Source: Zootoca vivipara (lineage: Eukaryota). Taken from it: a stretch of DNA of 64,000 nt. Position numbers and translations under genes: made by a program. The notes under the pieces are model-generated. The model was given only the letters and a program-made list of their open reading frames with translations, made no database searches and was not told the DNA's origin. Position 1 is the stretch's first letter. Each line of letters begins with the position of its first letter. Shown here one piece after another: positions 29,058 through 53,921 of the stretch. The DNA lies in the NCBI RefSeq assembly GCF_963506605.1, contig NC_083292.1, positions 31,062,001-31,126,000 of the forward strand. The letters are read 5' to 3'.

Positions 29058-32000
29058 ATGAGCTGGCCAGGCGAGGAATGGAAGGTGGGGCTGCCGTCCC
29101 GGGCCTTGCGGGCCATCGCCGAGGTGGAGCAGCGGCTGGAGCGCCTGCAGAAGGAGCGGCAGCAGAAGCAGGTGCAGCTGGACACCCTCGAGGCCATGAT
29201 GCACAAACAGAGGCAGAAGGTAATTGCAGGGGCCGTGGGGCAGGGAGCTCGTACCTGGCAAGAGTCTCCCATCCTCTGGACACATCTGCCATGCAAGGGG
29301 TTTTCTGTGGTTCCGGTTTGAGGCTTCCATTTGTTATCATAACAATAATGCAGACACCCCCCCCAAGTGTCCCTATTCTCCAGGGAAGATCCCGGATTTA
29401 CAGAATCCATCCCGGTTTCTGATTTGTTCCCAGAATGTCCCGCTTTCCCTTAGGATGTCCCAATTCTCATTGGAGAAATGTTGGACGGTGTGCAGTTATG
29501 TGATCTCTGAGTCAAGGAGATAAGTAACTATACAACCTTTAAAAGACATCTGAAGGCAGCCCTGTATAGGGAAGTTTTTTAACGTTCAATGTTTTATTAT
29601 GTTTTTATATATGTTGGAAGCTGCCCAGAGGGGCTGAGGCAACCCATTCAGATGAGCAAAGTATAAATAATAAAATTGTTATTATTATGGAACAGGGCAT
29701 CCCAATTTTCACTGGAAAATTTTGGAGGGTATTTATACTCTCCAAATTTATTATTTGTACCCTGCCTGTCTGACTGGATTGCCCCAGCCACCCTGGGTGG
29801 CTTCCAACAGAGTATAAAAGAACACAACAAAACATCAGACATAAAAAACTTCCGGATACAGTGGTACCTTGGTTTAAGAACAACTTAGTTTATGAAAAAC
29901 GTGGATTAAGAATGCTGCAAACCCGGAAGTAGGTGTTTTGGTTTGTGAACTTTGCCTTGGAAGCAGAACATGTTCCGCTTCCTGTTGAGTGTGTTCCATT
30001 TGTAAATTGAGTCCTCCGCTGCTATGGGAAAGCACACCTTGGTTTAAGAACGCTTTGGTTTAGGAACGGACTTCCGGAACAGATTAAGTTCGTAAACCAA
30101 GGTACCACTGTACAGGGCTGCCTTCAAATGTCTTCAGAAAGTCATGTAGTTGTTTATTTCCTTGACTTCTGATGGAAGGGCGTTCTACGGGGCAGGTGCC
30201 ACTACCGAGAAGGCCCTCTGCCTGGTTCCCTGTAACTTCCCTTCTTGCAGTGGGGGAACCGCCAGAAGGCCCTCGGCGCTGGACCTCAGTGTCTGGGCTG
30301 AGTGATGGGGGTGGAGACGCTCCTTCAGGTATACAGGGCCGAGGCCGTTTAGGGCTTTAAAGGTCAGCACCAGCACTTTGTATTAATCCAGAGGTGGGGA
30401 ACCTTAGGCCTGCAGGTCAAATGTGGCCCCCAGGCATCTTTCTCTGGCTCTCAGGAATCAGGCTGTATGATATACTCAGCTCCACCCCCTCATCGGTCCT
30501 CCTTTTTTCCCCTGGCTGGCATGTGACCTTGAACTCTGACATTGCCTCTTGCTTGTCTGGCTGGAAGATAGAGGAAAGTGTGTGTGTGTGTGTAAGGTAG
30601 CTGGGATTTTTGTGGCCCTTGATCGGGGGGGGGGGGAATTCCCCTCCCTGAAAACTTTCAAATGTACGCAGTTTATTTTTGTTCGAGCACCTGGGTCATG
30701 GAACTTATACAGTGCTTTTGGGGTGTGCTTCAGAGCTATCCTTACAACAACCCTGTAAGGTAGAACAACATTATTCCCCTCCCTGTTCACTGCAGACACG
30801 CTGCATAGAGTTCCTAGCCCAGAGCGGCCATGGGTCCTACTTTAAAGAGGATGGTCCTCTGTTCTGTTTAAAGACGAAGAGCCTTTAGAACAGGCATGTC
30901 AAACCTGCGGCCCTCCAGATGTTTTGGACTACAATTCCCATCTTCCCCAACCACTGGTCCTGCTAGCTAGGGATCATGGGAGTTGTAGGCCAAAACATCT
31001 GGAGGGCCGCAGGTTTGACATGCCTGCTTTAGAACAAAGAGCACTTGGGAGGTTACTTATCAATAGTCAGCAACTGAGCAAGCCACCTTCAAGACTGCTG
31101 GGGTGCTGAGGCTAAGAAATAATTTGCTTCTAATCTCCTGTGAGCTATGAGGGAGCTGATGTTTGAACCAAACGCAAAACTTATACCATTAACCCAGCCT
31201 TTGCCAACTTGGCGCCTTCCAGAGGTTGTTGGACTACAACTCCCATCAGCCCCAGCCAGAACAGATGGGAACTGTACTCCAACAACTTGTGGAGGGCATC
31301 AGTTGCCGATGGCTGCATTAACCAATATGCCGTCTTGGCTCTTATTCTGCATAGCACTTATGTATTGCTGTTCCCATATGTTCAATTTATGTTGCATACA
31401 CAATTTCAGAGTTCTTGCACGGACCCTGCAAGGTAGGCCAGTGTGGTTATTGCCCCATAGCTCAGGGGTAGAGGATGAAGCCCAGGCCAATTTGCAGATC
31501 CTGGGCTGACTGGAGATTTGCAGTCAGCGAAAGAAGGGTATGAATCTTTTTAAGTTTTCGAAAATTATCAAAAAGCAAGCTTCTAGCTCTCGTGATACTG
31601 GAGAAAAACTCAGGATTATGTCTATAATCTGTGTGCTTTCTTGGCAAATAAAAAAACCAGACTGCAAGCTGGGAAAAAGCACTGGAAGTGCAATAAACCA
31701 GGGGAAACAATGCAGTATCTTTATATGGATCATGAAACTTGATTATTTTTTTAGCGGGGAGTGTTCAGAATGTACCCAGCTGACTCACATTTTGGAGCAA
31801 GGAATATCACTACACTACAATATATAGGCAGGATGTGCAGCAGGAGTGGGGAACCTTTTTCGGTCCGAGGTCCACATTCCCTTCTGGCCAACCTTCTGAG
31901 GGCCGCATGCTAATTGTGGGTGGGGCCCTAGACAAAAGTGGGTGGAGCAAGGAATGCAAATATTACATACAACCCTACACACCTTTCTGTGCTCCATCCA

Positions 32001-35000
32001 AAGAAGCAAGAGGCACGAACAGAGTTCAAGGGCACATTCCAGGCAGGCAGAAACAAGTTGTGTGTGCAAAGGATGGGTATGTGGCTCAGAAAGATTCCTG
32101 AGGGCCAGATAGAGAGCCTTGGAGGGCCACATCCCTGATGTACAACCAACATTGGTTTGCACCCAACAGAGTTTGCACTGAACTGAAATTGGGTGACGCA
32201 TTTTCATTCATTTCGACAGGTCTCCTCTGAGCAGGGCTGGATTGGAGCTGTGATTCCTCCATTGCCGGGGGCTGGACTAGATGTCCCTTGGGTGCCTTCC
32301 AGCTCTACAATTCTATGATTCCGTGGACACAAACCACCTTGCTTTTTTTGGTTTTGTTTTAATGCGGCTCATCTCTTGCTGTTCTTTGCAGCACGAAGAG
32401 GAACGGGCCTCGTGGGCCCTTCTCTCTCAGGAGAACAGGAGTCTGGCCGAGGCGTGTGAGCAAGTGGAGCGTAGCCGTCAGCGGTTGGCGCAGGAGCTGC
32501 AAGCCAAAGAAGCCCAGCTGAGCTGCCTGGAGGCTCAGCTCGCTCAGGCCACCCGACGCCAAACGGAACTGGAAGAAGAGCTGCGTAGGTACAGTGCAGG
32601 AAACGTTGCTGGGATTCGTGGGGTCGGTGGGTTTGGCGTCACACGGACAGAGGCGAAAGCAGCAGTCTGTGCCCCTCGGGTTTGCAGGCTTGTCGGGTGG
32701 AAGCAGAATTCAGTAGCCAGGTGCAGGGATCCTAGGAACAACTTTTAAAATAACAAAACAAGTTTCTAGACCTGAAGGCCGTGAAGGAAGGGGGGGGCGC
32801 CATGCTTGATGAAATCGCAGAAGTCCGAGGGAAGGAGCTATGCTGGATTTCCATGGCTCAAAGGACAGGGCTTCAGTGTCCTAGACAGCCGTTTGGTCTG
32901 CCTGGTGCTTACAGGAGCAGAAGAAATTATAGCACAGTCAGCAGATATATGCAGATTAGTTTGATTTCCATAAATCTGTGCAGGTGGCAAAATCTCTGAG
33001 CTTCCTTTGGTAAATAAAAGCTGGCGTTTGGAGCATGCAAAATGCTCTGTGTACATTCGCTCAGTAAGTCTTACAACAACCCTGTAAGGTAGGACTCTTG
33101 CATTATGGTTCAGGGTGGGTGGGGGTTAAAATGGAAAACATGCAGCCAAGCACCTTCTTCAAAACAGTGGCCAATTAGACAGGGAATCGGAGGTATACGT
33201 CTCCCAACAGTGGCATAGCCATTGTGGCTAGTACCCAGTGATAGCAATGGGTTTGTCTAATACTTTTTAAAAAACCCTCCAAGCAGGTGACCACCACAAA
33301 ACCTTCATTCATTCATTCATTCATTCATTCATTCATACCCCACCCATCTGATTCAATTGCCATAGCCACTTCAGGTGACTTCTTTGTCAAGGACAAAACA
33401 AAAAGCCTGATGGAGAGTTTATACCAGGCATCCCCAAACTGCGGCCCTCCAGATGTTTTGGCCTACAACTCCCATGATCCCTAGTTAACAGGATCAGTGG
33501 TCGGGGAGGATGGAAATTGTAGTCCAAAACATCTGGAGGGCCGAAGTTTGCGGATGCCTGGTTTATACCCTCCAACATTTCTCTGATGAAAATAAAGGTA
33601 AAGGGGCCCCTGACCATCAGGTCCAGTCGTGTCCGACTCTGGGGTTGCGGCGCTCATCTCGCTCTATAGGCCGAGGGAGCCGGCGTTTGTCCGCAGACAG
33701 CTTCCAGGTCATGTGGCCAGCATGACAAAGCTGCTTCTGGCGAACCAGAGCAGCGCACGGAAACGCCGTTTACCTTCCCGCCGGAGCGGTCCCTATTTAT
33801 CTACTTGCACTTTGATGTGCTTTCGAACTGCTAGGTGGGCAGGAGCTGCGACCAAGCAACGGGAGCTCACCCTGTTGCAGGGATTCGAACCGCCGACCTT
33901 CTGATCAGCAAGCCCTAGACTCTGTGTTTTAACCCACAGCGCCACCTGGGTCCCAGGTGAAAATAGTGAAATGATGAAAATAGTGACGTCCTATTCCTAT
34001 TCCATCGTCATCATCATGTTACTGTTCATACCTCATCTGACTGGATTGCCTCAGCCACTCTGAGTGGCTTCCAACATATATAAAAACACAATTAAACATT
34101 AAAAAAAACTTCCCTAACCAGGGCTGCCTTCAGATGGCTCAGGGGTCAGATAACTCCATAAGCTCCAACATTTCTCTGATGAAAATAGGGACGTCCTAAG
34201 GAAAAGCAGAGCCTAGGGCTTGCCGATCAGAAGGTTGGCAGTTCGAATCCCCGCGACGGGGTGAGCTCCCGTTGCTCGGTCCCTGCTCCTGCCAACCTAG
34301 CAGCTCGAAAGCACGTCAAAGTGCAAGTAGATAAATAGGTACCGCTCCGGCGGAAAGGTAAACGGCGTTTCCGTGTGCTGCTCTGGTTCGCCAGAAGCGG
34401 CTTTGTCATACTGGCCACATGACCTGGAAGCTCCCTTGGCCAATAACGCGAGATGAGCGCCGCAACCCCAAAGTCGGTCACGGCTGGACCTAATGGTCAG
34501 GGGTCCCTTTACCTTTTAAGGAAAAGCAGGACATTCCGGCATCAAATCAGAAACCAGGATGGCTTTTGTAAATCTGGGACTGCCCCTGAAAATAGGGATA
34601 CTTAGAGGGTCTAAGTGTTTGAGGGATGCTTTGCTACCCCAAGCCAAATTCCAACGTATTTTGGGGTCATATAATGCCCCTAAACAAAATACGTTGGGAC
34701 AATAGATTTGAACTTCTTAAGTTCTACTTTCCTGGATCAGTTCTTTATTTGGAGCATCCCATGAAACAAAAAAGCAAAAAAAAAAGCTGGTACATTCCAT
34801 TGGCTGGAGTAAAAAGTTCCCCAGGTACAGGATCTCACTGCAGACTGGTACACACAGGTACACTGCCTATGACCATGGAGGATCTCCTTTCTCCTGTTTC
34901 CTTCTCTCTGCCTCCCTCCAGGTGCCAAATCGAACTGGACAAGCTGCAGTCGCAGTCCCACTTGGCCCTCCTGCCCCCCCGCTGGGGTTCCTCCACGCCG

Positions 35001-38000
35001 TGGGCCGAAGGTAAGAAACCGGAAGCTGAGGAAAGGGCACAGGGTCCTCTTAGGCCAAGCCTGCAAGCAAGAGGCGCCTCTTCCTACGTCCGGGGATTAG
35101 AAGCTTTGCCAGATGGAGGTGGAATTAGCGGCTGAAGAGTCACGGGAAAGAGTCAAGGCAGTGTCTGTGACTTCGTGGCGGGGGGGGGGGGGGGAGAGAA
35201 GGGCTTGTCAGTTGAGGGATTTAGATTTAGATTTATTTAGGGCATTTGTACCCCCACTCTTCACCCAAAAAGGCTCCCACAAAGCCTTGCATACAGGACC
35301 GTCCCTGCCCACAGGCTTTACAATATGAAAACAAGACAAAACACGACACACAAGGGAAAAGGGACACGGAGGGAAGAGGAAAATCAAAACTCTGGTGGCT
35401 TGGAGATGGGGCGGTAGTCCACAGCGGAGTAGTTTTGCTCGTGTCTATATAACCTACTACCACAGGTAGGCTTTATTCAGTCTGCAGGCCCAAATTGGTT
35501 CCCCAGGCAACCAGTTCTCCCTCTGTTCTCTAGGTGCCATCGAGGCCAAAGCAGAGCTTAGCAGGACCCTTGCAGCCGGAGCAAGTGTGAGTATTGCTTT
35601 AATCTGGCTTTGGAACAGCCATCGCCAACTGGTGCCCTCCAGGCGTTTTGGACTCTGGCTCCCATCAGCCAGCGCTGGTTGAATCCGATGGGACTTGTAG
35701 TCTAGGACACCTGAAAGGCTTCAGATTGGCAGAGTCTGCTTTTAAAGCTGGTCTTTCTCTTACTCATTTCCCACTTTCCAGCAGATTCAGGATAGCAGCC
35801 CTGCTGTTAGAGGCCCCTGCGGGAAGGAGAGCCCCGCCGCCTCCTGGCAGCAAGAAGCGGCTTGTCCCAGTGCCCCACCTGGGAGCCCCATCCCCACAGA
35901 GAATGGCGAAGGGGCCCAGGCGATGGCATCGGAACTGGCATCCATGGGAGAGAGGCTGGAGAAAGAAAATCAAGGTATCGGAACGTGGTCTGTAGGTTTT
36001 TAAAAACCATGCGGCCCTCAGAATTCCGCCCGGCCCTCAGAACTCTCCCCGGACCACAATTCTCCCTGGCCTTGCTGGGAATGCGTGAGGCTTACCATGC
36101 AAACGCTGCATTTGCATCCTCACCCCACCCACTTTAGACTCTGGCCCCACCCACCATGTGGCCCTCGGAAGGGAATGTGGCCCTCGGGGTGGAAACGGTT
36201 CCCCACCGCTGCCTGAGCAGCTTTTCCTTTTCCCTCCTCTGCCATTCAGAGTTGAGACTCGCTCTTGGCAAAGCGGAAACCCGGATGCAAGAAAAGGAAA
36301 GGGAACTATGGAATTTGCAGGGGCAGCTGGAGTTGATCCGAGCTGAGCTGGCTCAGTGGAAGAAGCAGCGAGGCGGCCAGACGGAGGTGAGTAGGCATGA
36401 GACTCTACATTTCAGGATCACGGGCTCGAGCCCCACGTTGAGCAAAAGGTTTCTGCACTGCAGGGGGTTGGACTAGATGACCATCAGGGTCCCTTCCAAC
36501 TTAAGGTTGACTTAAGGCTGAGCACACAGCTCCAGTGCCAGCCTTTGTCTATGCCATGGTGGCCTGCTTGACCAAACCTCTGGTGTTGAGGCTCTGGGAG
36601 GGGTCTATGCTACTGTTGCCCGGCTGACCAAAGCTCTGGGTCTTGCAAAACCAGGCTGGCAGCAGACTCATACGTTTTGGTGAGACCCTGGTGGGCCATA
36701 TTGTGGAACAAACTGGTATGGTAGTCCAAATTTGCCACATCCACACAGAGAGGGCAGCAGTGGGAGAAAGGGCAGGATGTGGGTGATTGCAGCCTATAAG
36801 TATCTAATCCCAACCGAATTTATGCACACATCTGTGTGGCTCCTTTTAAGAAATACTATTATTAGGCAGGGCTTTTTGTGGGAGGGGTACGTAAAGACAC
36901 TAAACCTGCATGGTTCCAAAGGCGGAAAGGCATCCTCATGTCCTCTCCGAGGGGCGCTGTTAGTTTCGCTTTTTAACTGTGCATGTGCCTCACCGTAATG
37001 GCCTCTTTTGTCTCCACAAGCAACCCTGTGAGGAGGGCTATTAATATTCCAAACAGAGGAAGAGCGATTGCAATACTTGCTCTAGCGGCCCCATCCAAGA
37101 GCAGTAATAGTTGAATGGGGAACTGGGCTGATTTGAATCCAGCCCTTGCCCTCCCTAGTTCGACTCTTCAATTCCTAAACAGCTCCTGTGCCTCTACCTG
37201 CCTGTCCTGTCCTGTTAGGAGTTCAGGCTTCCAGCTTGGTGGAGGAGCTTTGAGCTCCACCACCTGCTTTTCAGAAAGAGGCTTGTCTGCAAAGTGTTAG
37301 CCTCCCCTCCCCCTGCAGAAAGGGTGCATCTATTGCCCCTCACTGGGCTAGCACGGGAGGACTGTGATTATGAATTTGCAAAAGGAAAGGAAGGAAATGA
37401 CCCCCAAACCACCCTGCTCTCTCTTAAATGAGGCATCCCCCTGCCTTGTAAAAAGATAAACAAACCCACATCATGAAGTTCTGGTCCATCAGGGCAATGG
37501 TGAACTGCCCTACCAACCTCGGTCTTTGCCTCAAACAGCCCCCACCTGCCTTTCTTCTTTCTTACAGCCAGTCCAGGTGGTGGCCCTGCCTGCCAGAGTC
37601 CTCCTCCTTGGCCTCAGCGTTGCCCCTTGTAGAACTCAACAGGAAGGTGGATGGGGACCAAACTAGCTTTGGTTGGCTCTGCCTGCCATTGGCTCTGGCG
37701 CCACCTACTGGTGGGCTCCCTGCCTTCTGCCCTACCGGTTCTAATGGGCACCAGCTACTGCTGGTGTGAGAGAGAAAGGGAATCCACGACCACCCCCTAA
37801 ATCCTGGCCCCAGCTCTGCGCAAAACCATGACGAAGCAACCTTGCTGGTTGGGTATTCCCCCCCCCCCTTCCTCGTGCACCGCCTGACATGTTTTACGAG
37901 GCCCCGTGTCCTCGTTGGTTGGCCGGGCACAATTATTAGCACCATTAATTATATCGGCTGTGTTTCTTCGCAGGAAACGCTACCGAAGATAGCAGCCAGT

Positions 38001-41000
38001 GTTTCCCATCACCCACCCTCCCCTCCGGCCCCCAATCTGCAGGTGGAGAGTTTTACAAGGCTGCAGCTCATCAGCCGAGTGCCTTTTTACAAGCTTCTTC
38101 TCGGGAACAGGTCAAGGGAGTCTTGGCAGCGCTGGAGGTTGCAGGGGACGGGGCGGGGGACGGCGGCAGGCACTTTTATGCAAGATGCTGGCTGCAGAGC
38201 AGCCCGATCCAGCCTCTCCGTTGGCTGCAACACCAGCGGAACCAGCAGGGCTTCGCAATTCCTGCCTCTTTGGGAACTCCAGGCCTCCCTATGCAGTCCT
38301 CAGGGCTTTCCCCAGCCCAGGCCCCCTCCCAGTTGACACCCCTCACCAGCCTTGCTCCTCGCTGTCCTCAAAATGGTCCTGTGCTGTGCCCTTGAATTGT
38401 GACCATTCTTCAACTGCCTGGCAACAAGGTGGATAGATAGATGTGTAGATTTGGGGCCTAGACACCTCTGCCTTTCCCCTCATGGCTGTAGCGTAGCCCA
38501 TAATACAACAACACATAGGGTGCTCTTTCCTCTTAATGATGTAAGAGTCTGGCTGCTGGATCAGGCCAATGGCCCATTTATTTCAGCATCCTTCTCTCCC
38601 AATGGCCACTGGGCTATTGCTCAGGTGAGGACGTTTCAAGTGGCGTCGCAGCGGTTGACATTTATTGCCTCCCTCTAATGGATTAGAGTTCCTTTCTTTT
38701 TCTTCCGTTCCAGAGCAGCCCCCTGGAAACCAGAGGGAGCCGGCCGTCAGTCGATGTGGGAGACCTGCGCCAAAGAAGGCACCAGCAAAAGGTGGGCTAA
38801 TCTTCCTAACATATTGTTGCACGCCACCCCAATCTCTGTGCGGTGCAAATCTCCAGTAGTTTCAGGCACTTATCTGGGATTGGTGTTTACTTTTGGAAAT
38901 GAGGCATAGCTGAGACCGTGGTGTCCTTATGATATATGGTTTATTTCCACATATATACAATCCAAGCCTACAGTGGTGGGTTTTACAGCATTTGCATCCC
39001 AATAGGGTCTTGCTTCTCTCATAGCCGCAGCCTTGGATTCAAACAGAAATCAATCACGGCTCTCAAACACACTCCGGCTTGCTGCTTTACTTCCAGGTCA
39101 AATCACTGCGACTATAACGCTGGCTTCGTCCTTCTTCTAACTAACCATGAGTTTGCTGTCTTGCACAGAGCCACTTTCCTTTGTTTTCCTTAATGGCTCA
39201 TCTCCCAGGCTATCGCCTCAACACTAGGGTTGCCATGTTTCAAAAAGTAAAAACCAGGACACCCCGAAAGTTGTTGAGCTGTTTTTTATACAAAAAACAC
39301 CCCCAGAAAGAAGAGTTTTTGATTGACTTCCCTAAGATCCAGCGCCCCCGGATGTATCTAGCCTATTTCCTCCTCCCCCAAACTCATAACTATAATATAA
39401 TATAATATAGTATATAATGTAAACCATACACATGTGCTATGGGCTGCTTTCAAACAGTGAGGTCAGGCAGAACTGCAGTACCAAGAATCCTTGGGTGCAA
39501 AATAAGCAGCAATTTATGATAACGCCATCACTGATATGTCACAAAGTTAATGAAGACTTGTAGCAACCAAATCATCCAATTAAGCTGAATGTTGGATGAT
39601 TCAGGACAGGTAAACAGAAGTCCTCCTTCGTGCAGCGCAAACTATGGAACTCACTCCCACCGGAGGCAGTGATGGCCACAAACCTGTTGCTGTTTAGTCG
39701 TTTAGTCGTGTCCGACTCTTCGTGACCCCATGGACCAGAGCACGCCAGGCACTCCTGTCTTCCACTGCCTCCCGCAGTTTGGTCAGACTCATGTTTGTAG
39801 CTTCAAGAACACTGTCCAGCCATCTCGTCCTCCGTCGTCCCCTTCTCCTTGTGCCCTCAATCTTTCCCAACATCAGGGTCTTTTCCAGGGAGTCTTCTCT
39901 TCTCATGAGGTGGCCAAAGTATTGGAGCCTCAGCTTCAGGATCTGTCCTTCCAGTGAGCACTCAGGGCTGATTTCCTTCAGAATGGATAGGTTTGATCTT
40001 CTCGCAGTCCATGGGACTCTCAAGAGTCTCCTCCAGCACCATAATTCAAAAGCATCAATTCTTCGGCGATCAGCCTTCTTTATGGTCCAGCTCTCACTTC
40101 CATACATCACTACTGGGAAGACCATAGCTTTAACTATACGGACCTTTGTGGGCAAGGTGATGTCTCTGCTTTTTAAGATGCTGTCTAGGCTTGTCATCGC
40201 TTTTCTCCCAAGAAGCAGGCATCTTTTAATTTCGTGACTGCTGTCACCATCTGCAGTGATCAAGGAGCCCAAGAAAATAAAATCTCTCACTGCCTCCATT
40301 TCTTCCCCTTCTATTTGCCAGGAGGTGATGGGACCAGTGGCCATGATCTTGGTTTTTTTGATGCCACAAACCTAGATGGATTCAAAAGAGGACTAGGCAA
40401 ATTCATGGAATAGAGGCCTACTGCTCTGCCTCCGCAGCTGGAGGCAGCAATTCTTCTGAATACCAGTTGCTGGAAACCACAGGAAGGGAGAGTTCTCTTG
40501 TGCTTGGGTCCTGGTAGCAGGTTGTCCACAGGCACCTGACTGGCCGCTGTGAGACCAGGATGCTGGTCTCTCTTTTTAAGTTCTTGGCAGTGGCTGTATA
40601 AGGTCCTCAGGCAGAGAGAATTCCCTTTAAGACTTCTTTAAATTGTGATTGAAGCAGGAACCTTCTGCACACAGAGCAGGTATTCTGCCACAGAACTGCC
40701 GCTTCTCCATGTTTTTGAATTTTTAAAAAATGTACAAGCAGCTCCCCATTTACATACATTCAAGGCACAAGCAACTGCGCATGTGCACATCGCTGCGAAC
40801 CTGGAAGTGGCACGGAAAGGGGCAAAAGCGGCCCTAAGAGAGTGCGAAAATGGCAGAAATGGTGCAAAAACAGCGCCTAGCAATCCCAGGAACCTTTGCA
40901 CCGACCATTGAGGCCTGTGGAGAGTTGAGGTTAGGTAAAGAGAATGGCATTAATGTCAGACCTGCAGACACTCGTGCTTGCTTATAGAGAATGAGTCATG

Positions 41001-44000
41001 AATAGCTGAAGCCTTAGCAATGTATTAAATGGTTCAGTGATTTGACAGTGTCCGCACTCAATTTTTTCCTTACATGTGTCTGATGTAAGCATGGAACAAC
41101 ACTCTGCAGGTTTTATTGGAATGTCATTTTAATATAAGATTAATAAAGTACTCTTTGAGTTGCCTTAACTCAGGACCCTTCTGCCACGATATTTGCAACA
41201 AAGGAAAAGGCCACGGCCTGAAAAAAATTGGTGGACCAGAATAATAGTCTCCAAGAAAACAACAACAACCCAGACTCCTTTCTTTTGCCAACTTTCTCTT
41301 TTGCAGTGGGGGCATCAAAGCAGTCATTGGACAGACATGGGTGCAAAAAGTGGCCTTGTGCCTTGTGCCTCTGACCTCTCTGCTCTTAACACCCACTTTC
41401 AAAACAGGGCCTGCTTGGGACAGAAAAGGTGCCCTCTAGTGGCAGCCGTCGTAGCATAAGCTCTTCCCGCTTGGAGCAGCCGGCTGAGAAACGGGGAGCT
41501 CACACCAAATTGAAAGGTGGGACTCTGCGCATGTTTTTTGTGTGTGTTTGTGTTAGATGGCAGGGATGTAAAGAGCAGTCTGCATTTGTTTTTGTCTTTG
41601 CAAGAATCGCGAGCCTTCAGTCCTTGTTGTATTTATCCCTGGTCATGGCTATATAGAAATGTGTTTGCATATTGTGATTATATTTTGTATGTTATGTATA
41701 GTATTTCATATATGGCATACCTTTCTGGTATATATATGGAATAGTTATATTTTGTATTATATGTAGCTTTCATGCACAGTAGGTGTATGGGTTTGATCCA
41801 GTGTCCTACTCAGAGTTGTTATTGTTTAGTTGTTTAGTCGTGTCCGACTCTTCATGACCCCATGGACCAGAGCACCCCAGGCACTCCTGTAGACCTTTGA
41901 AATTAATAGATATGACCAATTTAGGCCCATTCATTTAAAAAAGTTTCCTACAAGCAGAACTTAGTTGGATTCCACCCTGTTTTGCTTGTATTATGGCATT
42001 TTTCAGTTGTAGGGTAATCCCTTGCTAACAAGGGAACAAGTTTGCAAGTTAATAAATTAATAATATTTTTATTTTTCTTTAAAACTCTGTTAACTGTGCT
42101 TTTCTTTCATGTGTTCATTCCTGGTTATAGTTACAGTGGTGCCTCGCTAGACGAATTTAATTCGTTCCACAGGTCTTTTCTTATAACGAAAAATTCGTCT
42201 AGCGAATCCCATAGGAATGCATTGATTTTTTTTGTGGATTTTTTTTTGCCCATAGGAACGCATTAATTGAATTTCAATGCATTCCTATGGGAAACCGCGA
42301 TTCGCTAGACGAATTTTTCATAAAACGAAATTGTCTAGCGAGGCAACCTCTGCTCAAAAAATCATTTCGTTAAGCGGAAATTTCGTTAAGCAGGGCATTC
42401 GTTAAGCGAGGCACCACTGTATACTCCATTTTTTTCTCCTAAGAGCTCAAGAGTTCATGGTTCTTCTCACTCCCCATTTCATCTTCTCAAAAACCCTGTG
42501 AGTTAGACTGAGAGACTGTGACAGCCCCCTGCCAAGATGACCCAGTGAGCTTTCATTACTGGGTGGGGGGATTCGAACCCTGGTCTCCCAGGTCCTAGTC
42601 CAGCACCCTAACCACTGCACCACGCTGCTGCTCCAGATTTTATTACCTATACTAGTTCTAAAGGAGGAGTAGCCCTTTAAACTAGGGATGTAACCTCAAT
42701 CCTAAATTTGGATGATTTAAGGCTACCTAGTTAATGGATGACAAACCGGTGAACTGGTTCCCCCACTAACTGTGTTTGAACTCCTCCTGAGTGGGGAGGA
42801 ACAGAAATATTTTTTTTCTTTTGATGGATAGTGTCAGAGGTGAGTGCTGTGTCTGTGTGGCTATTTATAAGTGTAATACCTAGTAATAAAAAATACGCAA
42901 TTGAAATGTTGTGCATTCATATTCAGAAGCTTGCATTTGAACTTCCAGGAACTCTAATTAAATCATTTTTCCCCTGTTGTCCAGGTGTAAAGAATTGGAG
43001 AATGGAGGATTTTTTAAATTATATGTTTCTTTAAAAGAAATATATGGGGCTGGATTCAGTGAATGCGTCCCACTAGTGAAAGCTTCCGCTAGTGCCGTGG
43101 GGCTCTCCCCCGTCGGCTCCCTCCTCTGCCCTCCATGTCCCCCAAGACTTTGGGGGGGGTTGGGAGACACACACACCCCGAACGGTGTGTGGGGGGAGGA
43201 GAGGGCAGATCCTTCCACCAGGCAAGCCGTCCGAAATGCTTTTGCTGACAGAGTGATCTCCTTAGCACTATGTTGAATTCCTCCCCAACCCATAATTTTT
43301 TTTTTTAATGCAAGGGAGCATTGCAAGCAAGATTTATACACAGAATGGTCGAACGTAATATTTTTGCCTCCAGATCCTGACTCCTGATTTCGGCACACCT
43401 GATTCAGACTGTGCCCTCAGAGTAGACCCATTGAAATTTCGCTTGCTGCTTTTTCTCTCCACGCACCCACCAGCACTAGCAACTTGCCGCATGCAGTTCA
43501 ATTTTTGTTTTAATTGAGGCTTCTTTCAAAACACATTTGAAGCACGCAGCTCCCCCCCCCAAAACCCTGGGAACTGTAGTTTGTTATGGGTGCTGGGAAC
43601 CACAGCTCCGTACAGGGGTAAACTACGATTCCCAGGATGCTTTGGAAGTGTGCACTTAAAATGCAAGACCTGAATGACAAAATTGTGATTTTATCTCTTT
43701 TAACTACAACGTATCACTGTTCTCAGGCCTTCTCTTCTCTGCCATCTCTTTCCTCAGGCTTTCCCTCACCGAGCTCCCGGGCCCAGAGTACGGAGCGGGG
43801 CCGGGAGGAACTACAGGCCCTCAGAACCGAGGTTTTGATGTTGCGGCGCCGCCTGGATGCCTCGGAGAGCCAACGCAAAACCCTCCTTGAGGCTTGCTGG
43901 CAGCAAGAGAAAAGCCGGGCCTGGGCCCAGAAGAGGCAGTTAGGCCCACTGGTGGGAGCGGCGGGCTGGCAAAAGACAAAGGACTCCCCAGAGATCCATG

Positions 44001-47000
44001 GGGATTGCCAGGCCCCCAGGAGCAAAGGACAGGCCTTGGCGGGCGGCGGGGAAGTCTCTGTGGCAGAAGAGGTTGAGGAGGAAAGAGGGGCACTTGAACC
44101 CGAGGCTGTGGCAGAGCCGGGGAAGGCGCTGGCCTTGGACGTAGAGACGTCTGAAACAGGAGAAGATGCACCAGCGCCAGCCCCACGGCAGGCCCATGGG
44201 AAGACTGAAGCAGGGGGCCAAGGAGGCAGGACCCCCGACCTGGAGGGGAATGTGGAAGGTTTGCAGGAGAACCTCTTGGACTTGGCCTCCGGCAAAGCCC
44301 AAGCTGAGGCCCAAGCCATCTTGGCCCAGGAAAAACTCCAGGTCCTGCAGGCCACGCTGGGGAGGCAGACGGAGCGGTTGGCGCGAGCCATGGAGACCCA
44401 GAGCCGCCACGTGGAGGAGCTGCTGGCGGACGCCGAGGAGAAGGAGCAGCTGATGAGGAGCCTCCGGCAGGAGCTGGAGGAGACCAAGAAAGCCTTGGAA
44501 ATGGCGGACGACGAGGGCCAGAGGCTGCGGGCTCTGCTGGGGCAGAGGGAGGCGGAGGGGCACCACCACGCAGAAAGCCCCTCAAACACCTCGGAGGTAC
44601 GCGGAGGCAGCGAGGCCTCGGAGGTCCCTCTGGTGTCGGCCCAGCTGCAGGGAGGCATGTTGAGCACTGCGGACGTTGGTCTAGCGGGACGTCTGCCCGA
44701 AGAGAAGCAGGTTCAGCCTGGAGTCCAGGAACAGGTAAGTTTATTCTCCTCGAGGCGTGCTAGGAATTTTTTATGGATTTTAATTGTTGAAAGCCTCTTT
44801 GTCCCACTCTCCCGCCAAAACCAAAAAGCCCGTGGACCAGCTTACAAAGGTCATTGATGCTATCAGTCCCTGCCTGTGGTTTGCAATATAAAAGACACAA
44901 AACAAAAGGAAAAGGAATTCGGAGGGAGAAGGGGAGGGCAAGCCAGATCCAAGGCTTACACTATTTAAAGAAAGAGAGAGCATTTGGAATATATATATAT
45001 TGGGGGAGAGGGGGAAGGGGGTGCTGAGCACAAAATTCCTCTTGCCAGGTGTCTGGACTGATCTCTTGCAAGTAACCTTTTGAAATCAGGCCTCAGGCTA
45101 TCCAACTTATTGCACTGCTTTCCCCTGGGGAAAATCGTTCTTAGGCTCTCAATCAGAGCGAGCTGCAATTCTGGTTTTCTCTGGATGGATTGATGTTTGC
45201 TCCAGTTTAGCACTAAAGCTTGGGTTTTCCCTGGGAAAGGATCGGGGCAAGAGGGAAACGGAAAGTGCAAATCAAGCAGGGGGGCAAGCGGAAGTGTGGG
45301 CGAGCTCTTAGCGGTGTCCGTTTTCTGTCTGCAGCTGGAGGCCTCTCTTGCCCAGCTTCAGCAGGAAAACCTGGTCCTGCGCAAGGAGCTGGCTACCTGG
45401 GAGGCCTGGCACCAGAAAAGAGGAGAGGAGGACACCACTGGCCCCTTTGAACTGGTCGGCTCGGGAAATGGCAGAGAAGCAGCCGAGATGGCAGATGGTA
45501 AGGGGGGGGGGCATAGAATATAGGAGGAGAGAATCCAAACTGGGGGAGGAAGAGAAGAGGAATACCTTGTTTCGTGCACTGGGAAATCATCTGCAGCATA
45601 CATTTAAAGCACTATGATATCACTTTCAACAGCCATGGCTCCCACCCCCACCCCACCCCCAGAATCCTGGGAACTCAATCTCATCTTGCGCCTTTTTTTA
45701 TTCTTTTGTTCGTCAGTATACCTATTTCCTTACTGTCCATTTTGATATTCAATATTTTGGGCCTTCCTCTCCCCCCCCCATTTATCCCTTTAATTTCCGC
45801 TGCTTTTGTTGCCAAATTATAATATGATATCATTTTTAGTAGCCAATCCTCCTTAATTGGTACCCCATTACTCTTCCAATTGAGATTGGTTGGAAGCACT
45901 AAAGGGTGGGTGGAGAGTTGGGTGGTGGGGGAGTTTGTTTTCTTTTTAATTAAGTAAAGATTATTTTTTAGTTCTTGTATCTTAGGTTAGTTTGCGTTAT
46001 TTTTCCTTTATTTTGATTTATTGTAATAATATTTTGATTATGGCAAAAAAAATTGTAAATTGTGCGAAAAGTTAATAATTTTTTTTAATTTAAAATAATA
46101 ATAATAATAAAAAGAATCCTGGGAACTCCCCTCAGAGCTACAGTTCTCAGAGTACTTCCCAGGGAACTCTGGGAATCTCAGCTCTCAGTACCCATAACAA
46201 ACTACATTTCCCAGGATTCCTTGGAGGAACATGGAGCCAAATATTTCTCCTTTTTTTGAAATGGCAATGTTTTTCTTTTTAGCACAGGAAGGTCATGGGG
46301 GAAACCGGACATCTCTTCTTTTGTCACCGCACAGCTGCCCCAATAACCCCAGTTTGCTAAGGGTGCTGGGAACTGTAACTGTGAGGAGCAAACTACAACT
46401 CCCAGGATTGTTGGGTAGGGTGCTTTAAATATCTGGTGTATATGTACCCTAATTCAAGGCCTCTGTGTCAACTTGCAGTTCCTGAAGCTTCCCAGAAGAG
46501 AGAGCCCTTGTCTCAGGGGAGCCGGCGAAATGTCCAGACCCAAACTGAAGGACTAGAGTTTGGCCATCGGCGCAGGGAACGTGTCTCCGTGGCCTTTGAT
46601 GACACTCAGTATGAACCCTACGGGCTCCCTGAGGTGGTCATGAAAGGTATGTGGGGAATCGGGGAGGGGAAGAGACAAAGGAAGCACCACAAGGCCATCA
46701 GTGGTACCATGAGGTGAGTTTAGAGCAGGCATCCCCAAAAAGCGGCCCTCCAGATGTTTTGGCCTACAACTCCCATGATCCCTAGCTAACATGACCAGTG
46801 GTCAGGGAAGATGGGAATTGTAGTCAGAAACATCTGGAGGGCCGAAGTTTGGGGATACCTGGTTTAGAGTCTGGACTTAATGTACTTATGGTGGAAACCA
46901 AACAGCCATGGCTCCCCGCATAGAATCATGGGAACTGTAGTTTGCTGAGAGCTTTTTTAGGAGGCCTCTCTATTCCACTCACAGAGCCAGAATTCTGAGA

Positions 47001-47629
47001 GTTCCCAGTGAAGAGAGATGGATTGTTACACCACTCTGAGAACTGCAGCTTTGTGAGGGGAGTTGCTAGTCTCCTAATAGCTCTCAGCACCTTTAACAAG
47101 CAACAGCTCCCATAATTCTTTGGGGGAGCTTGTAGCTGTTAAAGCAGTATAACAGTGCTTTAAAACAGAGACGGATTTAAGGCAGTGCGACCGGTTCCAC
47201 TGCATTGGGAGCCAAGCCTAGCTGGCACCACAACTATGACACAATGAATTGAGCAGAACAAAAATGCAGCCAGAAATACGGTTAGAAAGTATATAAAATG
47301 TTTGTTTAATGGGAAAGTGCATTGAGGAGCATGGGATGGTACTATTTTAGGGTGAATGCATACGTTAGTTTGCATGCAAACCTTTCAGCTGAAAGGAGAT
47401 TTTTTCAACTTGAAAACGTACCAGAAAAGGACACCCCACACCACTGTGTCTGCTTTAGCAAATCTGGCTTCGTTTCTCCCCTGCAGGCTTTGCTGACATC
47501 CCATCCGGTCCCTCTTGCCCATACGTTCTCCGCCGGGGCATTTTGGGAAGTGCCCCCGTTGCCCAGCTGGCACCGCGAGCAGAACCAGAAGAGGATTCCC
47601 CTGAGGCAGAGGAGGGGACGGGCGTCTGA
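29058..47629 (+). CDS. Centromere protein F-like (miniature CENPF paralog); exons 29058-29219, 32392-32588, 34922-35010, 35534-35586, 35782-35974, 36250-36386, 38714-38791, 41408-41516, 43758-44734, 45335-45497, 46479-46646, 47487-47629; ~822 aa
   Basis: The N-terminus MSWPGEEWKVGLPSRALRAIAEVEQRLERLQKERQQKQVQLDTLEAMMHKQRQK aligns with recalled CENP-F MSWALEEWKEGLPTRALQKIQELEGQLDKLKKEKQQRQFQLDSLEAALQKQKQK. Further matches: R|CQIELDK, SWQQE, EKENQ|ELR, and C-terminal YEPYGLPEVVMKG|FADIPSGPSCPYVLRR (CENP-F FEPEGLPEVVKKGFADIPTGKTSPYILRR). All 11 introns are GT-AG and the phases chain into one stop-free ORF of 2469 nt. Exons 35534, 38714 and 41408 are supported only by splice signals and phase. 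Confidence 0.85.
29859..30110. mobile_element. Tigger/pogo-like MITE inserted in an L2 3' fragment
   Basis: TIR cagtggtaccttggttta...taaaccaaggtaccactg with TA TSD. The L2 fragment continues at 30113-30380 (-). Confidence 0.85.
30891..31026. mobile_element. 136-bp hAT MITE, copy 2
   Basis: TIRs; TSD ctttagaa. Confidence 0.9.
33425..33560. mobile_element. 136-bp hAT MITE, copy 3
   Basis: TIRs; TSD gtttatac. Confidence 0.9.
33594..33957 (-). mobile_element. Sauria (POM-type) SINE, full length
   Basis: tRNA-like head, (ACCTTT)n tail, and tgaaaata repeated on both flanks. Confidence 0.85.
34210..34516 (+). mobile_element. Sauria SINE, 5'-truncated
   Basis: 13-bp TSD taaggaaaagcag (34197-34209, 34517-34529). 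Confidence 0.88.
39686..40362 (-). mobile_element. BovB (RTE) LINE, 5'-truncated, inserted into a CR1-like fragment
   Basis: Uninterrupted 216-aa RT C-terminus (DFIFLGS...EIKRCLLLGRKAM...IDAFELWCWRRLLRVPWTARRSN...HGVTKSRTRLND). 11-bp TSD gccacaaacct (39675-39685, 40363-40373). Confidence 0.92.
41815..41890 (-). mobile_element. Short BovB 3' end
   Basis: Near-identical to 39686-39760. Confidence 0.75.
42134..42419. mobile_element. Tigger/pogo-like MITE
   Basis: TIR cagtggtgcctcgct...agcgaggcaccactg; TA TSD. Confidence 0.85.
43758..44734 (+). CDS. Large coiled-coil exon of the CENPF-like gene
   Basis: It lies inside the 406-aa ORF 43637-44857. Strong polypyrimidine acceptor at 43757 and donor CAG|gtaagt at 44735. 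Heptad-rich E/L/Q/A/R segments. Confidence 0.85.
46726..46861. mobile_element. 136-bp hAT MITE, copy 4
   Basis: TIRs; TSD gtttagag. Confidence 0.9.
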
Positions 47630-47783
47630 GAACAGCCTACCAGGTAAGAGATCCTGGTGTCTAAAACAGCTGCACCGCCCCGGAGTCAGCTGCAGTTTTG
47701 AGTCGGGTGTGGAAGCCCTGTTTGCATTTTAATGCAATAATAAATTATATGCCTAGCATATGGGGATTAGTGGCAGGAGAACA

Positions 47784-47817
<34 letters not shown>

Positions 47818-47839
47818 GAGGATTTTGCAACCCCTAGTA

Positions 47840-47975
47840 CAGGCATCCCCAAACTGCGGCCCTCCAGATGTTTTGGCCTACAACTCCCACGATCCCTAGC
47901 TAACAGGACCAGTGGTCAGGGAGGATGGGAATTGTAGTCCAAAACATCTGGAGGGCCGAAGTTTGGGGATGCCTG
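47840..47975. mobile_element. 136-bp hAT MITE, copy 5
   Basis: Same TIRs and body; the TSD is not preserved. Confidence 0.85.
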
Positions 47976-48568
47976 CCTGTCTGTTACCATCTTCAAATAT
48001 CTAAAAAGCTGTCACATGGAAGTTGGAGCAAGCTTGCTTTCTGCTGCTCCAGAGGAGAGGACCACAACCAATGGATTCTCCTTCACTGGAGGTTTCCAAA
48101 CAGAGTTCAGGTGGCCATCTGTCAGCGGTTCTCTAGCTGTGATTCCTGCACTAGGTGTCCCTTCCAACCCTACACAGTATTATGATTGTCTGAGGACCTC
48201 TCCGTCCTGCCTACATTTGAGCATATGCCATACAGTATTTCAATTTCGTGCGGATGCCTATTTGGATGTTTGCAGGGCTTACACATTAACTTACCTGTTT
48301 AATATAAATGCACAAACTGATGGTTCCTTTGTCTGCAATGTCAGTTGATGATGGGGGTTTTCCCCACTGCTGTTAGACTCATTAAGCATTCTGTTCAAGT
48401 GAAAACAGAGTGGGGTGAAAGGGAAAGAAGCGACAGCTCAGTGGTCGAGCATGCCAGGCACCTCCAATTTAAAAGGGTCTGTGTTAGCAATTGATGGAGA
48501 AGACAAAACCCTGGAGACAAAACTGCCAATCTGAGCAGACAATCCCGAGTCTTCTCCCTCACTGCATA

Positions 48569-48808
48569 CAGTGGTACCTCTGGTTAAGAACTTAATTCGT
48601 TCCGGAGGTCCGTTCTTAACCTGAAACTGTTCTTAACCTGAGACACCACTTTAGCCAATGGGGCCTCCTGCTGCCGCCGTGCAGCCAGAGCACAATTTCT
48701 GTTCTCATCCTGAAGCAAAGTTCTTCACCTGAGGTTATTTCTGGGTTAGCTGAGTCTGTAACCTGAAGCATTTGTAACCTGAAGCATTTGTAACCCGAGG
48801 TACCACTG
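48569..48808. mobile_element. Tigger/pogo-like MITE (same family as 18973, opposite orientation)
   Basis: TIR cagtggtacctc...gaggtaccactg; TA TSD. Confidence 0.85.
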
Positions 48809-53778: not shown

Positions 53779-53921
53779 NNNNNNNNNNNNNNNNNNNNNN
53801 NNNNNNNNNNNNNNNNNNNNNNNNNNNNNNNNNNNNNNNNNNNNNNNNNNNNNNNNNNNNNNNNNNNNNNNNNNNNNNNNNNNNNNNNNNNNNNNNNNNN
53901 NNNNNNNNNNNNNNNNNNNNN
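53779..53921. other. Assembly gap (143 N)
   Basis: Run of N. Confidence 1.

What the first reader, a model, noticed from the sequence alone, without database searches (positions are those of the whole stretch)
29058..47629. Miniature CENP-F paralog between GPR137 and KCNK4: a probable whole-genome-duplication ohnolog of CENPF
Seen: an intact 12-exon ORF of ~822 aa, versus ~3,100 aa for CENP-F. It has CENP-F homology in the N-terminal ~280 aa and in the last two exons. Intron positions match my recollection of CENPF (after aa 54 ...QRQK|, within ..LR R|C.., NQ|EL and ..KG|FADIP). Established: human CENPF lies directly upstream of KCNK2 in the same orientation on 1q41. That region, with ESRRG and GPR137B nearby, is paralogous to GPR137-KCNK4-ESRRA on 11q13, and the human GPR137-KCNK4 interval has no CENPF-like gene. 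Inference: this is an old duplicate of the CENPF-K2P block, retained in this lizard, lost in the human lineage, and shortened by losing most of the central coiled coil. CENPF is usually treated as single-copy, so a second family member would be notable.
Basis: partly seen in the sequence, partly recalled or inferred. Interest (0 to 1): 0.92.

Follow-up and report, generated by a model that had tools for sequence, protein, structure and literature searches.

The report
Short ancient CENP-F paralogue gene
This lizard gene is a real, intact, shortened copy of the centromere protein CENP-F. It belongs to an old second CENP-F gene family that sharks, fishes, salamanders, turtles and lizards have, that was not seen in mammals or birds, and that databases list but no paper I could find has studied.

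Summary
A 12-exon + strand gene runs from ATG 29058 to stop 47627-47629. Every intron is GT-AG and the reading frame is 2469 nt (822 aa). Pfam finds CENP-F_N in exons 1-2 and CENP-F_C_Rb_bdg in exon 11.

The gene is neither the CENPF orthologue, nor a recent copy, nor a pseudogene. It sits in a well-supported clade ("L", the CENPF-like proteins; zebrafish name si:dkeyp-115e12.6). That clade holds rays and sharks, sturgeon, teleosts, caecilians, salamanders, turtles and squamates. It runs parallel to the true CENPF clade ("F"), which also spans sharks to mammals. AU tests reject a recent origin. The duplication therefore predates jawed vertebrates, which fits a whole-genome-duplication origin. 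The gene also lies 11.8 kb upstream of a KCNK4-like gene on the same strand, as CENPF lies beside KCNK2 in human.

Reptile L proteins are about 750-1200 aa, against 1340-2230 aa in fishes and amphibians. They keep the N-terminal coiled coil, one central coiled coil and the Miro-binding GFADIP motif. They lack the leucine-zipper repeats, any detectable kinetochore-targeting region and the CAAX box.

A related lizard's transcript contig is spliced at my exon 9-12 junctions, and dN/dS is about 0.28. RefSeq already lists the gene as "centromere protein F-like". I found no paper on the family. Function is inferred only.

The parts
29058..29219 (+). Exon 1: start codon and first 54 aa (MSW... start typical of the CENP-F family)
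   Evidence: Pfam CENP-F_N E 3.8e-19, profile positions 1-54. The donor is GT. 54/54 identical to Podarcis models.
32392..32588 (+). Exon 2: continues the N-terminal coiled coil and ends in a split Arg codon
   Evidence: Pfam CENP-F_N E 2.2e-13, profile positions 55-121. AG/GT borders.
34922..35010 (+). Exon 3
   Evidence: tblastn with the Elgaria orthologue P0005; AG/GT borders and phase.
35534..35586 (+). Exon 4 (53 nt)
35782..35974 (+). Exon 5 (mostly predicted disordered linker)
   Evidence: 64/64 identical to the Zootoca RefSeq protein P0164.
36250..36386 (+). Exon 6: second helix, the end of the region alignable with CENPF's N-terminal domain
   Evidence: Predicted helix 224-288 in P0152.
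38714..38791 (+). Exon 7 (78 nt); missing from the RefSeq model of this species
41408..41516 (+). Exon 8 (Ser/Arg-rich linker)
43758..44734 (+). Exon 9 (977 nt): holds two helices, including the central coiled-coil block shared by L proteins from rays to lizards
   Evidence: The central block of P0152 (about 516-630) aligns with axolotl, sturgeon, ray and carp L proteins at 31-43% identity. Contigs of a related species' run cover this exon.
45335..45497 (+). Exon 10: short coiled coil found only in reptile L proteins
   Evidence: The exon 9-10 junction is seen in a spliced contig of run X1.
46479..46646 (+). Exon 11: first half of the conserved C-terminal block (YEPYGLPEVVMK)
   Evidence: Pfam CENP-F_C_Rb_bdg E 6.8e-7. 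The exon 10-11 junction is in the X1 contig.
47487..47629 (+). Exon 12: GFADIP Miro-binding-type motif, acidic tail ending GTGV, stop TGA at 47627-47629, no CAAX box
   Evidence: The exon 11-12 junction is in the X1 contig. 46/46 identical among lacertids.
47641..48923 (+). Intron in the 3' untranslated region, followed by a 13th non-coding exon from 48924, as seen in a related species
   Evidence: X1 contig joint 47640 to 48924, GT..AG.
4790..5089 (-). Upstream neighbour: BAD exon carrying the BH3 region
   Evidence: Pfam Bcl-2_BAD E 1.1e-17.
59451..59639 (+). Downstream neighbour: first coding exon of a TREK/TRAAK-type K2P channel gene, read as KCNK4
   Evidence: Best PDB matches are KCNK4, E 2.2e-11, narrowly ahead of KCNK10 and KCNK2. 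ATG and donor positions. A second exon near 61400 hits Ion_trans_2.

Best explanation
This is the common lizard's (Zootoca vivipara) copy of an ancient second CENP-F family gene. I call the family clade L; databases call it 'centromere protein F-like', or si:dkeyp-115e12.6 in zebrafish and carp. The L gene and CENPF separated before sharks and bony vertebrates diverged and after the amphioxus lineage split off.

The most likely mechanism is the early vertebrate whole-genome duplications. The L gene lies just upstream of KCNK4 on the same strand, and CENPF lies beside KCNK2, the paralogue of KCNK4.

On the reptile stem the protein shrank to about 800 aa. It is predicted to be five long helices joined by disordered linkers, with a disordered C-terminal 125 aa. 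It keeps three parts:
- the N-terminal CENP-F_N coiled coil, which binds microtubules in CENP-F;
- one central coiled coil specific to the L family;
- the short C-terminal motif, with the G, F and D of GFADIP, through which CENP-F binds the mitochondrial GTPase Miro.

It lacks the leucine-zipper repeats, any detectable kinetochore-targeting (Bub1-binding) coiled coil, the basic C-terminal tail and the farnesylation box.

Inferred mechanism (not shown): a coiled-coil adaptor that links Miro-bearing organelles to microtubules, without CENP-F's kinetochore role. My confidence is about 0.9 for 'real gene, ancient paralogue', about 0.7 for a whole-genome-duplication origin, and about 0.35 for the Miro-microtubule adaptor function.
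For: - Gene model: intact, with Pfam domains.
- Orthologues: named in 13 lizard and more than 12 turtle species. Longer L proteins occur in ray, sawshark, sturgeon, teleosts, caecilians and salamanders.
- True CENPF: present separately in catshark, bichir, gar, coelacanth, caecilian, axolotl, frogs, gecko, bird, turtles and mammals.
- Trees of the N (330 aa) plus C (75 aa) blocks: L clade SH-aLRT 95 and F clade 96 under the PMSF model. L 99.1/98, reptile L 100/100 and vertebrates 100/100 under LG+F+G4.
- AU tests: reject reptile L grouped with sauropsid F (p 1e-4) and reptile L grouped with all F (p 0.002).
- L-specific C-block signature is shared from ray to lizard.
- Synteny: BAD lies upstream and a KCNK4-like gene lies 11.8 kb downstream on the same strand. 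In human, CENPF and KCNK2 flank the same intergenic SNPs (PMC10115645).
- Constraint: 17 synonymous against 15 non-synonymous differences to a related species, dN/dS about 0.28, binomial p 5e-4. Exon 12 is 43-46/46 identical across squamates.
- Expression: a 1098-nt contig of run X1 is spliced exon 9|10|11|12.
- Miro motif: G2988, F2989 and D2991 of human CENPF are required for Miro binding (PMC6428352; PMC10897228), and all three are kept here.
- Anatomy: AlphaFold2 secondary structure. hhalign of the L and F C-terminal regions aligns only the 62-column motif block. Precomputed Pfam lists PF10473 for F proteins and never for L proteins.
Against: - Three RNA runs of the same species gave zero depth on exons 9-12, with about 6% of each run read and tissue unknown.
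- Expression evidence comes from one run of a related species whose RNA status is only a guess, although its contig lacks the introns.
- Synteny of L with KCNK4 is shown in this window only.
- GPR137 was not verified.
- A full-length CENPF in this genome was not shown.
- The lamprey sequence does not resolve which duplication round is involved.
- The tree uses 416 columns of mostly coiled coil, and reptile L sits on a long branch.
- The list of differences behind dN/dS is incomplete.
- No binding or localisation data exist for any L protein.
- Mouse work shows that the CENP-F-Miro link is dispensable for development (PMC6428352), so the motif's importance is uncertain.
Confidence: 0.8

Rival explanations
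1. The gene is an ancient paralogue, but it arose by a small-scale or segmental duplication before jawed vertebrates rather than by whole-genome duplication. Its position next to KCNK4 would then be a block copy or a coincidence.
For: Only one L locus (this window) could be inspected. The lamprey sequence is unresolved.
Against: Both clades span sharks to tetrapods, and amphioxus falls outside both. The neighbour pairs CENPF/KCNK2 and L/KCNK4 are parallel. The further BAD-GPR137-KCNK4-ESRRA versus GPR137B-KCNK2-ESRRG paralogy is from general knowledge and was not tested here.
Confidence: 0.12
2. The gene is a recent, reptile-specific partial duplicate of CENPF that lost its middle.
For: The short architecture is seen only in squamates and turtles. 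The reptile L branch is long.
Against: AU tests reject grouping reptile L with sauropsid CENPF (p 1e-4) or with the whole CENPF clade (p 0.002). Reptile L shares the L-only C-block signature and the central block with ray, sturgeon, carp and axolotl L proteins.
Confidence: 0.02
3. The gene is the true CENPF orthologue of this lizard, rearranged and shortened.
For: A separate CENPF was not demonstrated in this genome. The findings index had no note on one.
Against: A gecko has a 2606-aa CENPF in the F clade. The turtles Chelonia and Mauremys, and the axolotl, each have both genes. The tree places the lizard protein in L.
Confidence: 0.01
4. The gene is a decaying or unexpressed relic in this species.
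For: Three same-species RNA runs gave zero depth on exons 9-12. An out-of-frame ATG lies 40 nt upstream of the start.
Against: The 822-codon frame is intact with 11 canonical introns. Intact orthologues occur across squamates and turtles. dN/dS is about 0.28. A related lizard has a spliced transcript contig.
Confidence: 0.04
5. The protein still works in mitosis like CENP-F (kinetochore, nuclear envelope, G2/M) rather than as an organelle adaptor.
For: It shares the N-terminal domain with CENP-F. The zebrafish L gene appears in a G2/M marker module list (PMC12891946), although that list looks like an orthology translation of human cell-cycle markers and not an expression result.
Against: No PF10473 repeats were found. 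hhalign found no similarity over CENPF's kinetochore-targeting coiled coil. The protein has no CAAX box and no basic tail.
Confidence: 0.2

Closest known systems
CENP-F (mitosin, LEK1, CMF1), the canonical vertebrate centromere protein F of 2400-3750 aa
   Same: It has the N-terminal CENP-F_N domain with the MSW start, aligning over about 250 aa at 30% identity. It has the C-terminal PF10490 block with the G, F and D residues of GFADIP that CENP-F needs to bind Miro. The intron inside the Gly codon of GFADIP is shared with mouse Cenpf. It has a K2P channel gene as its downstream neighbour.
   Different: It is a quarter of the length. It has no CENP-F_leu_zip repeats and no detectable kinetochore-targeting coiled coil. 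Its tail after the motif is acidic rather than basic, and it has no CAAX farnesylation box. It falls in a separate clade that diverged before jawed vertebrates.
Long CENPF-like proteins of fishes and amphibians (carp and zebrafish si:dkeyp-115e12.6 at 1711 aa, sturgeon 2091 aa, ray 1720 aa, axolotl 2227 aa, caecilians 1340-1431 aa)
   Same: They are in the same clade (L). They share the C-block signature AFDDTxYEPYGLPEVVMKGFADIPSGPxCPYVLRRGxLG, the central coiled-coil block, and the lack of a CAAX box. Tetrapod members share the G-[TS]-[GS]-V end.
   Different: Reptile members are about 750-1200 aa. Most of the coiled coil between the N domain, the central block and the C block is gone, and they sit on a long branch.
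Other Miro clients that use an FADI-type motif (TRAK1/2, MYO19, MTFR1/2/1L, VPS13D)
   Same: They share a short linear motif with a Phe or Leu predicted to insert into Miro's ELM1 pocket, set in a disordered region (PMC10897228).
   Different: The rest of these proteins is unrelated. Here the motif is inherited with the whole CENP-F C block, not acquired independently.

Membership tests
CENP-F protein family (Pfam architecture) | N-terminal CENP-F_N domain (PF10481) | tested here: met
   Exon 1 E 3.8e-19 and exon 2 E 2.2e-13, both above the gathering score.
CENP-F protein family (Pfam architecture) | C-terminal CENP-F_C_Rb_bdg domain (PF10490) | tested here: met
   Exon 11 E 6.8e-7, 29.1 bits against a cut-off of 21. 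hhalign of L against F gave E 7.6e-20 over 62 columns.
CENP-F protein family (Pfam architecture) | CENP-F_leu_zip repeats (PF10473) | tested here: not met
   No hit in any exon scanned at E up to 1. Precomputed Pfam lists PF10473 for F proteins but for no L protein.
CENP-F protein family (Pfam architecture) | C-terminal CAAX farnesylation box (C-x-V-Q end) | tested here: not met
   The protein ends EEGTGV. True CENPFs in the set end C-[KRQHNMT]-V-Q.
CENP-F protein family (Pfam architecture) | Kinetochore-targeting (Bub1-binding) coiled coil upstream of the Miro motif | tested here: inconclusive
   hhalign over the 300 aa upstream of the motif found no alignment. jackhmmer with the exon 10 helix found only reptile L proteins. 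Lack of detectable similarity in a coiled coil does not prove the domain is absent.
CENP-F protein family (Pfam architecture) | Miro-binding residues (human G2988, F2989, D2991) | tested here: met
   GFADIP is present at the exon 11/12 border. The residue requirements come from PMC6428352 and PMC10897228. Binding itself was not tested.
CENPF orthologue (clade F) | Groups with CENPF of other sauropsids in a tree | tested here: not met
   The lizard protein is placed in clade L. The constrained trees are rejected (AU p 1e-4 and 0.002).
CENPF-like paralogue family (clade L, si:dkeyp-115e12.6 type) | Groups with shark, fish and amphibian CENPF-like proteins in species-tree order | tested here: met
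   L clade 95 and 99.1/98. The order within it is sharks, then ray-finned fishes, then amphibians, then reptiles.
CENPF-like paralogue family (clade L, si:dkeyp-115e12.6 type) | L-type C block (Y-E-P-Y, V-V-M-K, S-G-P-x-C-P, R-R-G-x-L-G) and conserved central coiled-coil block | tested here: met
Ohnologue pair from the vertebrate genome duplications | Both copies present in cartilaginous and bony vertebrates, and a single-copy invertebrate chordate outgroup | tested here: met
   Catshark F and ray/sawshark L. Amphioxus falls outside both clades. Lamprey is unresolved.
Ohnologue pair from the vertebrate genome duplications | The two copies lie in paralogous chromosome blocks | tested here: inconclusive
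   L lies upstream of a KCNK4-like gene on the same strand, with BAD further upstream. CENPF and KCNK2 are neighbours in human. Only one L locus was seen, GPR137 was not verified, and the wider paralogy is from general knowledge.
Ohnologue pair from the vertebrate genome duplications | L-KCNK4 adjacency conserved in other vertebrate classes | not testable with these tools
No other tool here fetches eukaryotic loci.

The most novel reading that the evidence does not exclude
Vertebrates ancestrally had two CENP-F genes. The second (CENPF-like) is a natural separation-of-function version. It keeps only the microtubule-binding N-terminal coiled coil and the Miro-binding motif, and it serves organelle-microtubule coupling rather than kinetochores. 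It would have been lost in mammals, and apparently in birds and frogs, where CENPF alone carries the Miro link. In tetrapods it also gained a conserved PDZ-ligand-like C-terminus.
Probability: 0.3. Interest if true: 0.7.

Novelty: new variant of a known kind. Interest (0 to 1): 0.55.

Why it matters
CENP-F is a very large protein with several functions, and its kinetochore, nuclear-envelope, vesicle-traffic and mitochondrial roles are hard to separate. A second, ancient family member that keeps only the N-terminal domain and the Miro-binding motif would help in three ways.
- It would be a natural experiment on which functions belong together.
- It could explain why the Miro link is so conserved yet dispensable in mice.
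- It is open to knockout in zebrafish, where the gene exists.

There is also a practical side. The family's annotation is chaotic. Turtle copies are named rootletin-like, PAN1-like and WW domain-binding protein 11-like, and Lacerta splits the gene into two models. A zebrafish G2/M marker list carries the L gene where human lists carry CENPF, which suggests that orthology tables conflate the two genes.

The gene's existence is not new, because RefSeq already lists it in this species. What appears undescribed is the family as a distinct, pre-gnathostome paralogue with its own architecture.

Tried and rejected
I therefore fetched no orthologous loci, made no synteny check in other species, made no codon alignments, and did not compare CENPF intron positions.
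- The third homology search, with the caecilian L protein, returned only 7 proteins and added little.
- The ESM Atlas gave nothing for the putative GPR137 exon. For P0152 it gave only generic coiled-coil look-alikes.
- Pfam found nothing for the GPR137-like ORF.
- The findings index had no note on CENPF, KCNK2 or kinetochore genes elsewhere in this genome.
- jackhmmer with the central block drifted onto residues 60-130 of all family members. I take that as coiled-coil similarity and not as evidence of an internal repeat.
- The careful PMSF tree did not finish in two 5-minute runs. I replaced it with an LG+F+G4 run with 1000 ultrafast bootstraps.
- Literature searches for a CENPF paralogue, ohnologue or CENPF-like gene in vertebrates found nothing relevant.
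Exons were searched one by one by reference, and the database orthologues P0152, P0164 and P0005 stood in for the whole protein in trees and folding.
- Human CENPF entries (P0300, P0301) came back in a listing and were left out of all analyses.
- The N run at 53779-53921 was left as it is.


Full report
**1. What is in the sequence**

The + strand between 29058 and 47629 carries a 12-exon gene. I located the exons by translating the window. I then ran the Elgaria orthologue P0005 against the window with tblastn and read every border.

A script checked each exon separately. All eleven introns are GT-AG and no exon has an in-frame stop. The exon lengths sum to 2469 nt, which is 822 codons plus TGA at 47627-47629.

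Pfam was run exon by exon by reference. It finds CENP-F_N in exon 1 (3.8e-19) and exon 2 (2.2e-13), and CENP-F_C_Rb_bdg in exon 11 (6.8e-7). Exon 12 begins with the second half of that block, FADIPSGPSCPYVLRR.

Database orthologues stood in for the whole protein.

**2. Which species, and is the gene already annotated?**

Exons 5, 6 and 8-12 are 100% identical to P0164, 'centromere protein F-like [Zootoca vivipara]'. The window is therefore from the common lizard, and RefSeq already has the gene. That 632-aa model lacks exons 1-4 and 7, so the 12-exon reading is more complete.

A search of 1.84 billion representatives with exon 1, plus name look-ups, found full-length orthologues of 746-931 aa in these lizards:
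- Podarcis, Elgaria, Varanus, Sceloporus, Anolis and Hemicordylus;
- Lerista, Heteronotia, Paroedura and Eublepharis.

Copies of 536-1227 aa occur in more than a dozen turtles. Their automatic names vary widely: CENPF-like, rootletin-like, PAN1-like, and GRIP and coiled-coil domain-containing protein 1-like. The family is evidently not recognised as a unit.

**3. A second, ancient CENP-F family**

The same search returned proteins of 1340-2230 aa that start like CENP-F and carry the FADIP block about 40 residues from the end, with no CAAX box. They come from:
- a ray (Hemitrygon) and a sawshark (Pristiophorus);
- sturgeon and teleosts, including carp, where UniProt names the protein after zebrafish si:dkeyp-115e12.6;
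- the caecilians Rhinatrema and Microcaecilia;
- axolotl and a newt.

True CENPFs of 2400-3750 aa, ending C-x-V-Q, were identified in catshark, bichir, paddlefish, gar, coelacanth, a caecilian, axolotl, many frogs, a gecko, a hawk, turtles and mammals. Axolotl, Chelonia and Mauremys each have both genes.

**4. Phylogeny**

I aligned the first 330 aa and a 75-aa window around FADIP, then concatenated them.
- A PMSF quick tree gives clade L SH-aLRT 95, clade F 96 and vertebrates 99. Amphioxus and other invertebrate sequences fall outside.
- An LG+F+G4 run with 1000 ultrafast bootstraps gives L 99.1/98, F 91.8/82, reptile L 100/100, tetrapod L 97/100 and vertebrates 100/100.
- Within L the branching follows the species tree: sharks, then ray-finned fishes, then amphibians, then turtles plus squamates.
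- The lamprey sequence is unresolved.
- AU tests reject reptile L grouped with sauropsid CENPF (delta lnL 123, p 1e-4) and reptile L grouped with all CENPF (delta lnL 76, p 0.002).

The gene is therefore not a recent duplicate and not the CENPF orthologue. The split predates jawed vertebrates and postdates the amphioxus lineage.

The C block gives independent qualitative support. L proteins share Y-E-P-Y, V-V-M-K, S-G-P-x-C-P and R-R-G-x-L-G. F proteins instead have E-P-E/D, V-V-K-K, T-G-K-x-S-P and R-R-T-T.

**5. Synteny**

In the window:
- a BAD exon lies at 4790-5089 on the - strand;
- the L gene ends at 47629;
- a K2P channel gene starts at 59451 on the same strand, and its best PDB matches are KCNK4, narrowly ahead of KCNK10 and KCNK2.

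In human, CENPF and KCNK2 are the two genes flanking intergenic 1q41 SNPs (PMC10115645). The parallel pairs, L with KCNK4 and CENPF with KCNK2, fit a whole-genome-duplication origin.

The limits are these. No tool confirmed GPR137. The shared orientation in human and the wider 11q13/1q paralogy are from general knowledge.

**6. Is it functional?**

Intact frames persist across squamates and turtles. Conservation is strongly uneven. Against Caretta, exons 1, 2 and 12 keep 68-76% identity and most other exons 20-35%. Exon 12 is 43-46 of 46 identical across all lizards compared.

Reads and contigs were laid on 43001-49000.
- Three RNA runs of the same species gave no depth on exons 9-12. About 6% of each run was read and the tissue is unknown.
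- Run X1, from a related lizard, has contigs covering exon 9.
- X1 also has a 1098-nt contig spliced exon 9|10|11|12 at my junctions, within alignment ambiguity. The same contig shows one further intron in the 3' untranslated region (47641-48923).

Of the 32 listed differences between that species and the window inside exons, 17 are synonymous and 15 are not. With 252 synonymous and 774 non-synonymous sites this gives dN/dS of about 0.28, with binomial p 5e-4 against neutrality. The list of differences is incomplete, so the value is rough.

**7. Anatomy and likely mechanism**

AlphaFold2 on P0152 with 16 reptile sequences predicts five long helices: 27-144, 224-288, 363-412, 529-622 and 672-708. 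They are joined by low-confidence linkers, and the last 125 aa are disordered.

BLAST shows three blocks shared with the long L proteins: the N domain, a central block at about 516-630, and the C block. Only the N and C blocks are shared with CENPF.

hhalign of the L and F C-terminal regions aligns only 62 columns around the motif (E 7.6e-20). Nothing aligns over CENPF's kinetochore-targeting coiled coil. PF10473 is absent.

Published work maps Miro binding to human CENPF 2977-3020. G2988 and F2989 are essential (PMC6428352), and D2991 forms a salt bridge to MIRO1 R263 (PMC10897228). All three residues are kept here. The intron inside the Gly codon also matches the start of mouse exon 17.

What is inferred, not shown: the protein is a coiled-coil adaptor whose N-terminal domain contacts microtubules and whose C-terminal motif docks on Miro, without a kinetochore role.

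The acidic tail is nearly invariant. It ends G-[TS]-[GS]-V from caecilians to lizards, which resembles a class I PDZ ligand and hints at a further partner.

**8. Novelty**

I found no paper on a vertebrate CENPF paralogue. The only text naming si:dkeyp-115e12.6 lists it in a G2/M marker module. That list is probably an orthology translation of human markers.

The gene's existence is already in databases. The recognition of a distinct, pre-gnathostome CENPF-like family with a reduced architecture, shortened further in reptiles, appears to be undescribed. No L member from mammals, birds, crocodilians, snakes or frogs appeared in my searches, but those searches were not designed to prove absence.

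Noticed in passing
window 1894-2799 (+): A single-exon 302-aa ORF with a full aldo/keto reductase domain (Pfam E 1.4e-46) lies upstream of BAD. It may be an intronless gene or a retrocopy.
   Followed up: partly
window 29018 (+): An ATG lies 40 nt upstream of the MSW start and is out of frame here. In the Podarcis lilfordi model it lies 39 nt upstream and in frame, which adds 13 residues. The conserved start is the MSW one.
   Followed up: partly
window 29058-47629 versus P0164, P0001 and P0163: RefSeq models of this gene are incomplete or split in lacertids. The Zootoca model lacks exons 1-4 and 7. Lacerta agilis has a 190-aa 'CENPF-like' model plus a 732-aa 'GRIP and coiled-coil domain-containing protein 1-like' model for what looks like one gene.
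   Followed up: partly
window 47641-48923 (+): A related species' transcript contig removes a further GT-AG intron that starts about 11 nt after the stop codon, so the 3' untranslated region is spliced.
   Followed up: no
window 39694-40344 (-): A 216-aa ORF in intron 7 looks like the tail of a retroelement protein. It has no Pfam hit.
   Followed up: no
window 46601-47000, 47801-48000 and 48401-48800: These are interspersed repeats with very high depth in all RNA runs. Most reads fit only partly and run on into unrelated sequence, so they are transcribed from many copies elsewhere.
   Followed up: no
C-termini of L proteins (P0071, P0321, P0016, P0023, and reptile members): Tetrapod L proteins end G-[TS]-[GS]-V/I, which is like a class I PDZ ligand. 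Fish and shark L proteins do not. Pogona ends EEEASL.
   Followed up: partly
window 53779-53921: An N run of 143 bases is flanked by CA/GT microsatellite-rich sequence between the L gene and KCNK4.
   Followed up: no
PMC12891946 (zebrafish G2/M module): The L gene si:dkeyp-115e12.6 stands in a G2/M marker list where human lists have CENPF. This suggests that orthology tables treat it as the CENPF orthologue.
   Followed up: partly
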